Source: Octopus bimaculoides
Taxonomy: Eukaryota
Direction of reading: 5' to 3'
Length of the DNA: 64,000 nt
NCBI RefSeq assembly: GCF_001194135.2
Contig: NC_068997.1
Span: 10,238,217-10,302,216, forward strand
In this document: one piece after another, positions 25,244 through 26,644 of the stretch
Layout: each line of letters begins with the position of its first letter
Numbering within the stretch: position 1 is the stretch's first letter
Program-made: the position numbers and the translations under genes
The notes under the pieces: model-generated
Database searches by the model: none
What the model was told of the DNA's origin: nothing
The model's input: the letters and a program-made list of their open reading frames with translations, nothing else

Positions 25244-26644
25244 ATGAGCAAATCCAAATTTCACGACATGCCACTGATATCTCGAGCAGTGAAATACAAA
25301 AAGTACGTGGAAGAAAAACCACCTTCGGTAGCTTCAAATAATGTGACAAAAACATTTGAAGATATCAGTCGCCGCTTGAGCCAACGAAAGAAGTTGTTCC
25401 GTCAGCGTCGACGAATTGTGAACGTTGAGTTTTCTCTTGCTATGTTTGGCATAATTTTAATGTTAATTGAAACAGAATTGCATTCCAGAAATTACTATAC
25501 GAAATCATCTCTCATATCATTTTCTATCAAATTTTCAATTTCTCTTTCAACATTAGCTCTACTGGGTGCTATAATACTTTATCATATTACTGGCATACGT
25601 TTAAGAATGACTGCAAATGGTTTGGAAGATTGGCGACTGGCAACAGATACAAGTACATATATAAAGGTGTGTACGGAACTGATAATATGTGCTATACACC
25701 CTCCACCAATGAGCATTCAAATAGAATTATCTTTTAAAGATGGTGAAAATAAAATGGTCAGTCTCGATCCCTTTCTATCCATTTTGATGTTGCTACGACT
25801 TTACATCGTTGGCAAATTTATGGTGATTCACAGCAAGTTATACAGTGATACTTCCACACAGAGTCTCGGTGCGCTCAATAAAGTGAAAATTAACTCTCCT
25901 TTTATATTCAAAGCTTTGATGTCTACAAAACCAGGGACCACTTTGATAGCTATAATGGTAATCATGTTCTTTGTGGATAGCTGGGCGATGAAGACATGCG
26001 AATTTTACTACGCCAGTAAAAACGAGAATAATTTTTCCAACTCAATGTGGTTGATAGCAATTACATTCCTTACGGTTGGTTATGGAGACGTGACACCAAA
26101 TAGTTCATGCGGTCAGTTTATTTGTGTATGCACTGGGTTAATGGGAGTTGGAACAACGGCTCTGCTGGTAGCAGTGATTGCTCAGAAAATTGAACAGACT
26201 AGAGCTGAGAAATATGTGCACAATTTTGTGACGAGAGCGCATCTCGATAAATGTTACAGAAACGCGGCTGCAGACGTTGTGAAGCAGGTAATGTTTTTGT
26301 GGTGTCATCAGAAAGGCAAGAAATTATCGGAACAGCGGTTGACTCCCGCTGGTTCACTGCATTCTGTCAGTGGAAGCAAATACACAGATACTTTAAAACA
26401 TAGAAGCAAGTTACTGCAATCTATTCAACTAATGCGGGTTGCCAAGAGCGAAAATATGACACTGAGAGAAAGTGCCATCGGATTAATAGAGTTGAGTAAG
26501 ACTTTGGAAAACGTACTTCGGATGGTAGATGAGTTGAACACTAAGCAAAGCAACATCTGTGAAAGGGTGGTGTCTCTAGAGACTAGCACAAACCAAATAA
26601 ATGATAAACTCGACGCAATACATAATTTATTACTAGGTAAATAA
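25244..26644 (+). CDS. KCNN: small-conductance Ca2+-activated K+ channel (SK/KCNN family), divergent, intronless CDS, 466 aa
   Basis: Uninterrupted ORF. SK hallmarks: MFGIILMLIETEL (S1), NGLEDWR, CAIHP (S3), LRLY..HSKLYSD.S..SLGALNK (S4/S45A), ITFLTVGYGD filter (26072-26086), AEKYVHNF..NAAA (CaM-binding HA), C-terminal coiled coil. ATG in ACCATG context. Confidence 0.95.
   Translation: MSKSKFHDMPLISRAVKYKKYVEEKPPSVASNNVTKTFEDISRRLSQRKKLFRQRRRIVNVEFSLAMFGIILMLIETELHSRNYYTKSSLISFSIKFSISLSTLALLGAIILYHITGIRLRMTANGLEDWRLATDTSTYIKVCTELIICAIHPPPMSIQIELSFKDGENKMVSLDPFLSILMLLRLYIVGKFMVIHSKLYSDTSTQSLGALNKVKINSPFIFKALMSTKPGTTLIAIMVIMFFVDSWAMKTCEFYYASKNENNFSNSMWLIAITFLTVGYGDVTPNSSCGQFICVCTGLMGVGTTALLVAVIAQKIEQTRAEKYVHNFVTRAHLDKCYRNAAADVVKQVMFLWCHQKGKKLSEQRLTPAGSLHSVSGSKYTDTLKHRSKLLQSIQLMRVAKSENMTLRESAIGLIELSKTLENVLRMVDELNTKQSNICERVVSLETSTNQINDKLDAIHNLLLGK

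What the first reader, a model, noticed from the sequence alone, without database searches (positions are those of the whole stretch)
25244..26644. Intronless, strongly diverged SK/KCNN channel: candidate retro-derived paralog
Seen: the whole 466-aa channel (S1-S6, pore, CaM-binding domain, coiled coil) is one uninterrupted ORF with no stops or frameshifts, in a region where nearly every transposon ORF has decayed. It has a very short N-terminus. Established: canonical KCNN genes in vertebrates and Drosophila are multi-exon. Inference: this is a retroposed or intron-lost paralog kept by purifying selection, possibly one of a lineage-specific SK family, analogous to other expanded cephalopod neural gene families.
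Basis: partly seen in the sequence, partly recalled or inferred. Interest (0 to 1): 0.75.

Follow-up and report, generated by a model that had tools for sequence, protein, structure and literature searches.

The report
Octopus single-exon SK potassium channel gene
This is a real, well-conserved octopus gene for a calcium-activated (SK-type) potassium channel whose whole protein sits in one exon, but that layout is an old feature shared with snails, clams, worms and ribbon worms, not a cephalopod invention.

Summary
Window 25244-26644 (+) is an uninterrupted 466-aa ORF with the SK transmembrane domain, a GYG pore, a calmodulin-binding domain and a C-terminal coiled coil. It is by far the longest ORF in the window.

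The window comes from an Octopus species. The gene is already annotated in O. sinensis and O. vulgaris as [quoted passage not shown]. Argonauta has an orthologue at 87% identity.

dN/dS is about 0.05, even against Argonauta (dS ~1.4). Only the exon and about 60 nt around a conserved 3' splice acceptor still align between the two genera.

- **Age of the layout:** the single-coding-exon layout is ancient. Short SK paralogues (about 450-490 aa) are single-exon, or have a tiny 5' exon plus one big exon, in Haliotis, Argopecten, the nemertean Lineus and the annelid Owenia. All short SKs form one clade (200/200 NJ bootstraps), separate from the long canonical SK. The canonical gene spans 194 kb in Argonauta and 243 kb in Haliotis.
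- **Placement:** the octopod gene sits in a mollusc-only subclade. It is 51-55% identical to "group A" and 36% to the canonical SK.
- **No cephalopod expansion:** I found no cephalopod-specific expansion; octopods appear to keep only one short SK.
- **Retroposition:** this remains a plausible but unproven origin for the clade. It would date to an early spiralian ancestor.

The parts
25244..26644 (+). Complete CDS (466 aa plus stop) of a short SK/KCa2-like potassium channel
   Evidence: ORF listing and translation. Pfam SK_channel, Ion_trans_2 and CaMBD. SK2 9vu9_A at E=4e-94 over aa 34-460. dN/dS about 0.05 among four octopods.
25181..25237 (+). Polypyrimidine tract and AG: probable 3' splice acceptor of a 5' intron. 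The exon would start at 25238, in phase 0, two codons before the ATG.
   Evidence: The sequence 'tatttatttgcag|TTCACCATG'. The same acceptor, two codons, then ATG layout occurs in Argonauta, O. vulgaris and O. sinensis. It also occurs in Haliotis asinina and Argopecten, where an annotated upstream coding exon is joined at exactly this point. Octopus-Argonauta DNA similarity starts at 25181. Splicing itself is inferred, not shown.
25373..25720 (+). SK_channel domain (pre-S1 to S3 region), aa 44-159
   Evidence: PF03530, E=7e-36, profile positions 1-116 of 118
25955..26194 (+). Pore domain (S5, P-loop, S6), aa 238-317, with selectivity filter T-V-G-Y-G-D (GYG = aa 279-281, nt 26078-26086)
   Evidence: PF07885, E=1e-15. 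G279, Y280, G281 and D282 are invariant or nearly invariant in the 14-sequence alignment.
26195..26503 (+). Calmodulin-binding region (helices HA and HB), aa 318-420
   Evidence: PF02888 match to aa 382-420, 26.7 bits against a cut-off of 25. Aligns to isolated SK2 CaMBD chains 1g4y_B and 1kkd_A over aa 313-420. E322, V325, F328, A342, I394, R398 and K401 are invariant or nearly so.
26324..26374 (+). Octopod-specific insertion of about 17 aa, Ser/Gly-rich, in the HA-HB loop (aa 361-377)
   Evidence: Present only in Octopus and Argonauta among the 14 aligned SKs. Predicted as a non-helical loop at aa 363-376, with pLDDT below 50 at aa 366-375.
26480..26641 (+). C-terminal long helix or coiled coil, aa 413-466
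   Evidence: Aligns to the SK2 C-terminal helix up to aa 460. Predicted helix 413-465 with pLDDT 75-88.

Best explanation
Window 25244-26644 is a functional octopus gene for a short SK-type (KCa2-like) potassium channel subunit.

By homology it should assemble as a tetramer with a GYG potassium pore. It should be opened by Ca2+ through calmodulin bound to its HA/HB helices, producing a voltage-independent after-hyperpolarising K+ current.

The gene is the octopod representative of an old clade of short SK paralogues found in molluscs, annelids, nemerteans and probably flatworms. In this clade the whole channel is encoded in one exon. The clade is distinct from the long, canonical, multi-exon SK that the same animals also carry.

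The clade most likely arose once, by retroposition of a canonical SK transcript in an early spiralian. It then multiplied by local duplication in molluscs. Octopods retain a single copy, which sits nearest 'group A'.

The octopus gene probably has a non-coding (or alternative short coding) 5' exon spliced 6 nt upstream of the ATG.

Shown: the ORF, the domains, the orthologues, the single-exon structures, the clade membership and the purifying selection. Inferred: the retroposition, the 5' intron, expression, and Ca2+/CaM gating.
For: - **ORF and domains:**
- **Octopod orthologues:** each has a 1401-nt single-exon CDS in O. vulgaris, O. sinensis and Argonauta. A third Octopus species appears in genomic Logan contigs.
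- **Selection:** dN/dS is 0.047-0.067 against O. vulgaris and 0.049 against Argonauta at dS about 1.37. Between Octopus and Argonauta only 25181-26647 remains alignable.
- **Wholly single-exon short SKs elsewhere:** Haliotis cracherodii P0108, Lineus P0059 and Owenia P0177.
- **Small first exon plus one large exon:** Haliotis asinina P0004, Argopecten P0008 and Haliotis P0054.
- **Shared architecture:** the acceptor, two codons, then ATG layout is common to these genes.
- **Genomic support from a misassigned contig:** a bivalve-like group A SK sits as one uninterrupted ORF on a 2.1-kb contig of a bacterial MAG, most likely host DNA.
- **Canonical SK spans:** 194 kb in Argonauta and 243 kb in Haliotis.
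- **NJ bootstraps (45 taxa, 444 columns):** short SKs monophyletic 200/200; mollusc-only A+B+D+E+octopod clade 200/200; A+B+octopod 174/200.
- **Location:** short and canonical genes lie on different chromosomes or contigs in Haliotis, Argonauta, Lineus and Owenia.
Against: - No retrogene hallmarks remain. There is no poly(A) tract next to the 3' end; the nearest A10 run is 1.5 kb downstream. No target-site duplications were identified. None would be expected after several hundred million years.
- The tree is neighbour-joining only. Monophyly of the fast-evolving short SKs could be inflated by long-branch attraction.
- Orthology to group A versus group B is unresolved (47 and 81 of 200 bootstraps).
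- I could not read the intron positions of the canonical gene, because the gene ranges were too long to fetch.
- I have no transcript evidence for the octopus gene; the Logan contigs are genomic.
- The CaMBD match only just passes the Pfam cut-off, and its HA-HB loop carries an octopod-specific 17-aa insert. Calmodulin gating is therefore assumed, not shown.
- I did not retrieve the canonical SK of the window's own species, only that of Argonauta.
Confidence: 0.78

Rival explanations
1. The gene is a cephalopod-lineage retrocopy of the octopus canonical SK that diverged fast. It may be one of a cephalopod-specific expanded SK family.
For: - The CDS is single-exon.
- The octopod branch is long in the trees.
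- No squid or nautilus orthologue appeared among the hits.
- A squid cell atlas lists a 'cephalopod-duplicated' Kcnn paralogue (PMC12240821).
Against: - It is 36% identical to the Argonauta canonical SK but 51-55% identical to mollusc group A.
- It nests in a mollusc-wide clade of short SKs (200/200).
- It shares the acceptor, two codons, then ATG exon architecture with Haliotis and Argopecten.
- The single-exon state is also seen in a nemertean and an annelid.
- Only one such gene was retrieved from octopod proteomes, and the window holds no second copy.
Confidence: 0.03
2. The short SK clade is an old paralogue that lost its introns gradually, or by recombination with cDNA at its own locus, and not through a dispersed retrocopy. 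The octopus gene inherits that state.
For: - No retroposition hallmarks are present.
- Groups A and B keep one intron near the 5' end of the CDS. This could be a surviving ancestral intron. RT-mediated intron loss typically spares 5' introns (established knowledge).
Against: - Group C members in three phyla have no intron in the CDS at all.
- Short and canonical genes are on different chromosomes.
- The short forms start close to an internal 'KMS' of the canonical protein, as expected if a transcript was copied.

None of this is decisive.
Confidence: 0.15
3. The ORF is an unexpressed relic or pseudogene that happens to be open, or an assembly or annotation artefact.
For: No transcript evidence was obtained here. 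The window has many assembly gaps.
Against: - dN/dS is about 0.05 across dS about 1.4.
- The same intact ORF is present in four octopod assemblies, with collinear flanks in O. vulgaris.
- All invariant pore and CaMBD residues are kept.
- The ORF is 2.7 times longer than the maximum seen in any shuffle.
Confidence: 0.02

Closest known systems
Mollusc 'group A' short SK channels (for example Haliotis asinina XP 'SK2-like isoform X1', Argopecten irradians, Liolophura sinensis, Patella caerulea; 451-487 aa)
   Same: - 51-55% identity over the full length.
- Same length class.
- Same exon architecture: acceptor, two codons, ATG, then the whole channel in one exon.
- Same derived motifs, such as VGTTALLVAV in S6 and a shifted Trp in helix HA.
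   Different: - The octopod protein lacks an annotated upstream coding exon.
- Its N-terminal IEDPGIPLVG motif has degraded to FHDMPLIS.
- It has IHPPP where the others have IHP(I/F)PG.
- It carries a 17-aa insert in the CaMBD loop.
- Orthology to A versus B is not resolved.
Canonical SK / KCa2 channels (human KCNN1-3, Drosophila SK, Argonauta 'SK protein 1', Haliotis 703-aa SK)
   Same: - Same domain order: SK_channel, pore with GYG, CaMBD HA/HB, C-terminal coiled coil.
- Aligns to the SK2 cryo-EM chain over aa 34-460 at E=4e-94.
- Same fold.
   Different: - Only 36-38% identity, whereas canonical SKs are 62-80% identical to each other from molluscs to mammals.
- No long N- or C-terminal extensions.
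- One coding exon, against a canonical gene spread over about 200 kb.
Spiralian 'group C' short SKs (Haliotis cracherodii 457 aa, Lineus longissimus 464 aa, Owenia fusiformis 471 aa)
   Same: - Short N-terminus starting MSxxIEDPxIPLVG.
- CDS entirely in one exon.
- Member of the same monophyletic short-SK clade.
   Different: - About 40% identity to the octopus protein.
- Group C stays closer to the canonical SK (45-52%).
- No octopod group C member was retrieved.
Intronless nicotinic receptor families of molluscs (PMC6896357)
   Same: These are neuronal ion-channel genes that are intronless or have 1-2 introns. [quoted passage not shown]
   Different: It is a different protein family. The nAChR expansion is massive and largely lineage-specific, whereas the short SK clade is small (1-5 genes) and older than the phylum.

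Membership tests
SK/IK (KCNN, KCa2/3) channel family | SK-specific N-terminal transmembrane domain (Pfam SK_channel, PF03530) | tested here: met
   E=7e-36, 123 bits against a cut-off of 31.8, covering profile positions 1-116 of 118
SK/IK (KCNN, KCa2/3) channel family | Potassium pore with a GYG selectivity filter | tested here: met
   PF07885, E=1e-15. The TVGYGD motif is present, with G279, G281 and D282 invariant and Y280 nearly invariant.
SK/IK (KCNN, KCa2/3) channel family | C-terminal calmodulin-binding domain (helices HA and HB, PF02888) | tested here: met
   26.7 bits against a cut-off of 25, so a marginal pass, and only the HB half matches the profile. HA aligns to SK2 in the phmmer and MAFFT alignments. 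R398 and K401 are nearly invariant. A 17-aa octopod insert lies in the HA-HB loop.
SK/IK (KCNN, KCa2/3) channel family | Gating by Ca2+ through constitutively bound calmodulin; small, voltage-independent K+ conductance | not testable with these tools
   Needs heterologous expression with calmodulin and patch clamp.
Retrogene (processed retrocopy) | Lacks the introns of a multi-exon parental gene across the CDS | tested here: met
   The CDS is one exon in four octopods. The canonical SK of Argonauta spans 194 kb for 519 aa. Parental intron positions could not be read.
Retrogene (processed retrocopy) | Poly(A) remnant at the 3' end, and flanking target-site duplications | tested here: not met
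   There is no A-run within 1.5 kb of the stop; the first is A10 at 28171-28180. Target-site duplications were not searched for systematically. Absence is expected if the event is as old as the tree implies.
Retrogene (processed retrocopy) | Located away from the parental gene | tested here: met
   Short and canonical SKs are on different contigs or chromosomes in Argonauta, Haliotis asinina, Lineus and Owenia. This was not shown for the window's own species.
Cephalopod lineage-specific expanded gene family | Several close paralogues restricted to cephalopods | tested here: not met
   One cluster (Octopus spp.) plus one Argonauta orthologue are the only cephalopod short SKs among the listed hits. 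There is no second copy in the window. The nearest relatives are other molluscs.
Spiralian short single-exon SK clade (defined here) | About 450-490 aa, starts just before the pre-S1 segment, whole channel in one exon, groups with short SKs in the tree | tested here: met
   466 aa and one exon. Short SKs are monophyletic 200/200 and the mollusc subclade is 200/200.

The most novel reading that the evidence does not exclude
The short single-exon SKs may be a functionally distinct channel class that spiralians have kept alongside the canonical SK for more than 500 million years. Their calmodulin-binding region is remodelled: most group B members have no detectable CaMBD in Pfam, and octopods carry a Ser-rich 17-aa loop insert between HA and HB. 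They might therefore gate differently. Possibilities include altered Ca2+ sensitivity, control by phosphorylation, or acting as a modulatory subunit that co-assembles with the canonical SK. The octopod copy would be the sole survivor of this class in a large-brained mollusc.
Probability: 0.2. Interest if true: 0.55.

Novelty: new member of a known kind. Interest (0 to 1): 0.3.

Why it matters
The gene itself is ordinary. It is an already annotated SK-like channel under strong constraint.

The comparison has some value. Spiralians carry two kinds of SK gene. One is a highly conserved, long, multi-exon canonical gene. The other is a separate old clade of short paralogues with the whole channel in one exon. 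That clade expanded in gastropods, bivalves and chitons but is reduced to one gene in octopods.

Five full-text searches of the paper library, four of them aimed at this question, turned up no description of this clade. It adds a second ion-channel example to the retroposition-plus-duplication pattern reported for mollusc nicotinic receptors.

It also corrects the expectation that this is a cephalopod neural innovation. For physiologists, it flags that octopus SK currents may come from two very different subunits.

Tried and rejected
- **Other SK copies in the window:** tblastn of the protein against the 64-kb window found none.
- **Retrogene hallmarks:** I looked for a poly(A) run near the 3' end and found none.
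- **Logan contigs as transcripts:** I hoped the contigs carrying a 478-aa version (P0122) would show the 5' splice and the 3' end. They are genomic, collinear with the intron side of the acceptor, and break at a TE insertion. They give no evidence of expression.
- **Canonical SK DNA:** I tried to fetch it from Argonauta and Haliotis to map intron positions. Both gene ranges were too long to return DNA.
- **Chiton group A protein P0005:** it was not on record for a contig look-up.
- **First bootstrap run:** Biopython's distance calculator timed out. I replaced it with a numpy Kimura-distance NJ.
- **Other long ORFs:** 14 were scanned against Pfam for transposon or gene content. Nothing passed a curated cut-off.
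- **Upstream ORF extension (25091-25243):** I rejected this as coding. It is pyrimidine-rich, ends in an AG acceptor, and is not conserved as protein in Argonauta.
- **Literature:** five searches found no paper on single-exon SK genes in molluscs or spiralians.

Full report
**1. The observation.**
On the + strand an ORF runs from 25091 to 26644. The first ATG, in a good Kozak-like context (CACCATGA), is at 25244 and gives 466 aa. The stop-free run of 524 codons is the longest in the window. The next gap-free run is 226 codons, and 200 shuffles of the window gave a mean of 133 and a maximum of 195.

Pfam finds three domains:
- SK_channel, aa 44-159, E=7e-36.
- Ion_trans_2, aa 238-317, E=1e-15.
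- CaMBD, aa 382-420, 26.7 bits against a cut-off of 25.

The protein aligns to the human SK2 cryo-EM chain 9vu9_A over aa 34-460 (E=4e-94), and to SK4 chains at about 1e-59. An AlphaFold2 model was built on a 14-sequence alignment (mean pLDDT 68). Its best structural matches are SK2, SK2-4 chimera and SK4 chains. The membrane core gives TM 0.85 and rmsd 3.3 A over 279 columns.

**2. Whose gene it is.**
The identical protein is in the public collection on a 57-Mb contig. Its 90% cluster contains the O. vulgaris / O. sinensis protein (CAI9735171.1 / XP_036366369.1), named [quoted passage not shown]. Argonauta hians has an orthologue at 87% identity. Genomic contigs from three sequencing runs carry a version from a further Octopus species, with 95% CDS identity.

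The window is therefore from an Octopus species. O. bimaculoides is my inference, from the old-style gapped assembly and the sources listed. The gene is already annotated.

**3. Selection.**
Codon-aligned comparisons give the following:

| Comparison | dN/dS | dS |
|---|---|---|
| Window vs O. vulgaris / O. sinensis | 0.044-0.067 | about 0.09-0.13 |
| Window vs third Octopus species | 0.086-0.117 | about 0.15-0.18 |
| Window vs Argonauta | 0.049-0.050 | about 1.35-1.37 |

Between Octopus and Argonauta the only alignable DNA in 13 kb is window 25181-26647, apart from short dispersed repeats. That stretch is the CDS, about 60 nt upstream and 3 nt downstream. This is strong purifying selection on the protein.

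**4. Gene structure.**
The CDS is one exon of 1401 nt in O. vulgaris, O. sinensis and Argonauta. Immediately upstream lie a polypyrimidine tract and an AG ('tatttatttgcag|TTCACCATG'). Argonauta has the same feature ('cttttacag|TTCAGAATG').

In Haliotis asinina group A (P0004), aa 1-19 lie in an exon 61 kb upstream and aa 19-479 in one exon. That exon begins 'cag|AGGAAAATG'. In Argopecten (P0008), aa 1-21 lie 50 kb upstream and aa 22-482 in one exon, beginning 'cag|AGTAAGATG'. The acceptor, two codons, then ATG arrangement is therefore shared.

I infer that the octopus gene has a 5' exon, non-coding or alternatively coding, spliced at 25238 in phase 0. 'Intronless' then applies to the CDS only. 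This splice is not demonstrated. The only extra contigs I could obtain are genomic.

**5. The single-exon state is old.**
Short SK proteins of 447-490 aa are abundant in spiralians. Three are encoded with no interruption at all:
- Haliotis cracherodii P0108 (457 aa).
- The nemertean Lineus longissimus P0059 (464 aa).
- The annelid Owenia fusiformis P0177 (471 aa).

Haliotis group B (P0054) has one small first exon and then aa 55-517 in one exon. A group A sequence of bivalve type sits as one ORF on a 2.1-kb contig of a symbiont MAG, which is most simply host genomic DNA.

By contrast the canonical SK is spread over 194 kb in Argonauta (P0228, 519 aa) and 243 kb in Haliotis asinina (P0210, 703 aa). 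It is 62-80% identical from molluscs to a mammal.

**6. Phylogeny.**
I built a neighbour-joining tree of 45 proteins over 444 columns, using Kimura distances and 200 bootstraps.

| Grouping | Bootstraps out of 200 |
|---|---|
| All short SKs as one clade | 200 |
| Mollusc-only clade (groups A, B, D, E plus the octopod gene) | 200 |
| A + B + octopod | 174 |
| Octopod with A | 47 |
| Octopod with B | 81 |

With 40 more unnamed sequences the octopod pair falls next to group A, and no unnamed sequence joins it.

Identity of the octopus protein:

| Compared with | Identity |
|---|---|
| Group A | 48-55% (most members 51-55%) |
| Group B | 39-50% |
| Group C | 37-41% |
| Canonical SKs | 36-39% |

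Group A members are 54-67% identical to Haliotis group A. The octopod lineage is therefore somewhat accelerated, but the low identity to the canonical SK is a property of the whole subclade.

The caveats are that this is NJ only, there is no non-bilaterian outgroup, and long-branch attraction could inflate the monophyly of the short forms.

**7. No cephalopod expansion.**
The window has no other SK fragment. Each protein search lists only its best 120 hits. Among those, octopods contributed only this gene with the octopus query and none with a group C query. Several gastropods, bivalves and a chiton contributed two or more short SKs, often on the same chromosome or contig. Examples are Haliotis asinina A and B, 3.3 Mb apart, and Patella caerulea locus tags 007163 and 007168.

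A squid cell atlas mentions a 'cephalopod-duplicated' Kcnn paralogue expressed in cholinergic optic-lobe neurons (PMC12240821). I could not tell whether that is the orthologue of this gene. No decapodiform orthologue appeared among my hits.

**8. How it most likely works.**
By homology with SK2 and SK4, four subunits form a K+-selective pore. TVGYGD is conserved, and the pore and S6 residues are invariant.

Calmodulin sits on helices HA and HB after S6 and opens the gate when Ca2+ binds. The HA segment AEKYVHNF and the HB positions I394, R398 and K401 are conserved. From memory, R398 and K401 correspond to the SK2 Arg/Lys pair needed for constitutive calmodulin binding; this is a lead, not a test. 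The C-terminal long helix (aa 413-465) matches the SK coiled coil.

Octopod-specific features are:
- a 17-aa Ser/Gly-rich insertion in the HA-HB loop (aa 361-377), predicted disordered;
- a degraded N-terminal motif (FHDMPLIS for IEDPGIPLVG);
- IHPPP in place of IHPIPG.

Function is inferred, not measured.

**9. Origin.**
A single retroposition of a canonical SK transcript in an early spiralian, followed by local duplications in molluscs, fits several observations:
- the intron-free CDS in three phyla;
- the monophyly of the short forms;
- their location on chromosomes other than that of the canonical gene;
- their start aligning with an internal 'KMS' just before the E-[ED]-x-x-x-x-L-V-G motif of spiralian canonical SKs.

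The same mechanism has been proposed for intronless mollusc nAChR genes (PMC6896357). No poly(A) or target-site duplication remains. Stepwise or cDNA-mediated intron loss in place cannot be excluded.

**10. Verdict.**
The feature is real and it is a functional gene. It is an already annotated member of the SK family. Its single-exon layout is inherited from an old spiralian clade and is not a cephalopod novelty.

The paralogue status, the intron-free CDS and the purifying selection hold. The lineage-specific retrocopy and the expanded family do not. Interest is modest. The clade-level pattern seems undescribed in the literature I could search.

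Noticed in passing
window 2094-2200 (-), 6218-6288 (-), 15965-16060 (+), 17847-17938 (+); L001 2796-2902, 8386-8456, 10244-10340: A dispersed repeat of about 70-107 nt has four copies in the window. It is 84-90% identical to three copies around the Argonauta orthologue. It looks like a SINE-type element shared across Octopoda.
   Followed up: no
window 983-1549, 2369-3328, 8801-9466, 44608-45358, 49658-50405, 57650-58343 and nine smaller runs: There are fifteen runs of N (6285 bases in total). 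Most 'long ORFs' elsewhere in the window, in several overlapping frames, are artefacts of these gaps. The 14 other long ORFs scanned against Pfam have no hit above a curated cut-off.
   Followed up: yes
alignment A1, columns about 210-240 (P0228, P0210 against the short SKs): Canonical spiralian SKs carry an internal '...SSK-MS-Y..E[ED]xGVALVG'. This aligns with the very start of the short SKs ('MSxxIEDPxIPLVG'). Exon 2 of group A begins '[RS]K-M'. The short forms may therefore descend from a transcript starting near that internal Met.
   Followed up: partly
L008-L010 (Logan SRR11869391, SRR11869390, SRR11869385), 3' ends; corresponds to window about 27089: A third Octopus species has the same intact gene (95% CDS identity). 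Its contigs end where a sequence absent from the window begins ('CTAGCAGCGTCGCCCGGCC...'). This is probably a species-specific transposon insertion about 450 nt after the stop.
   Followed up: partly
P0029 (2098-nt contig labelled Candidatus Thiodiazotropha endolucinida MAG): A complete animal SK channel of bivalve group A type is deposited as a bacterial 'ion channel' in a symbiont MAG. It is almost certainly clam host DNA binned by mistake.
   Followed up: partly
Haliotis asinina CM074537.1 16.70 Mb and 19.98-20.06 Mb (L011, L004); Patella caerulea SNE40_007163 / SNE40_007168: Different short SK paralogues (groups A, B, D) lie on the same chromosome or contig in several molluscs. This suggests local duplication after the single-exon gene arose.
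   Followed up: partly
window 24596-24681, 27918-28010, 22457-22531, 29292-29419: Microsatellites flank the gene: (ACAT)n about 560 nt upstream of the ATG, (GTA)n 1.3 kb downstream of the stop, and AC, AT and AG dinucleotide runs.
   Followed up: no
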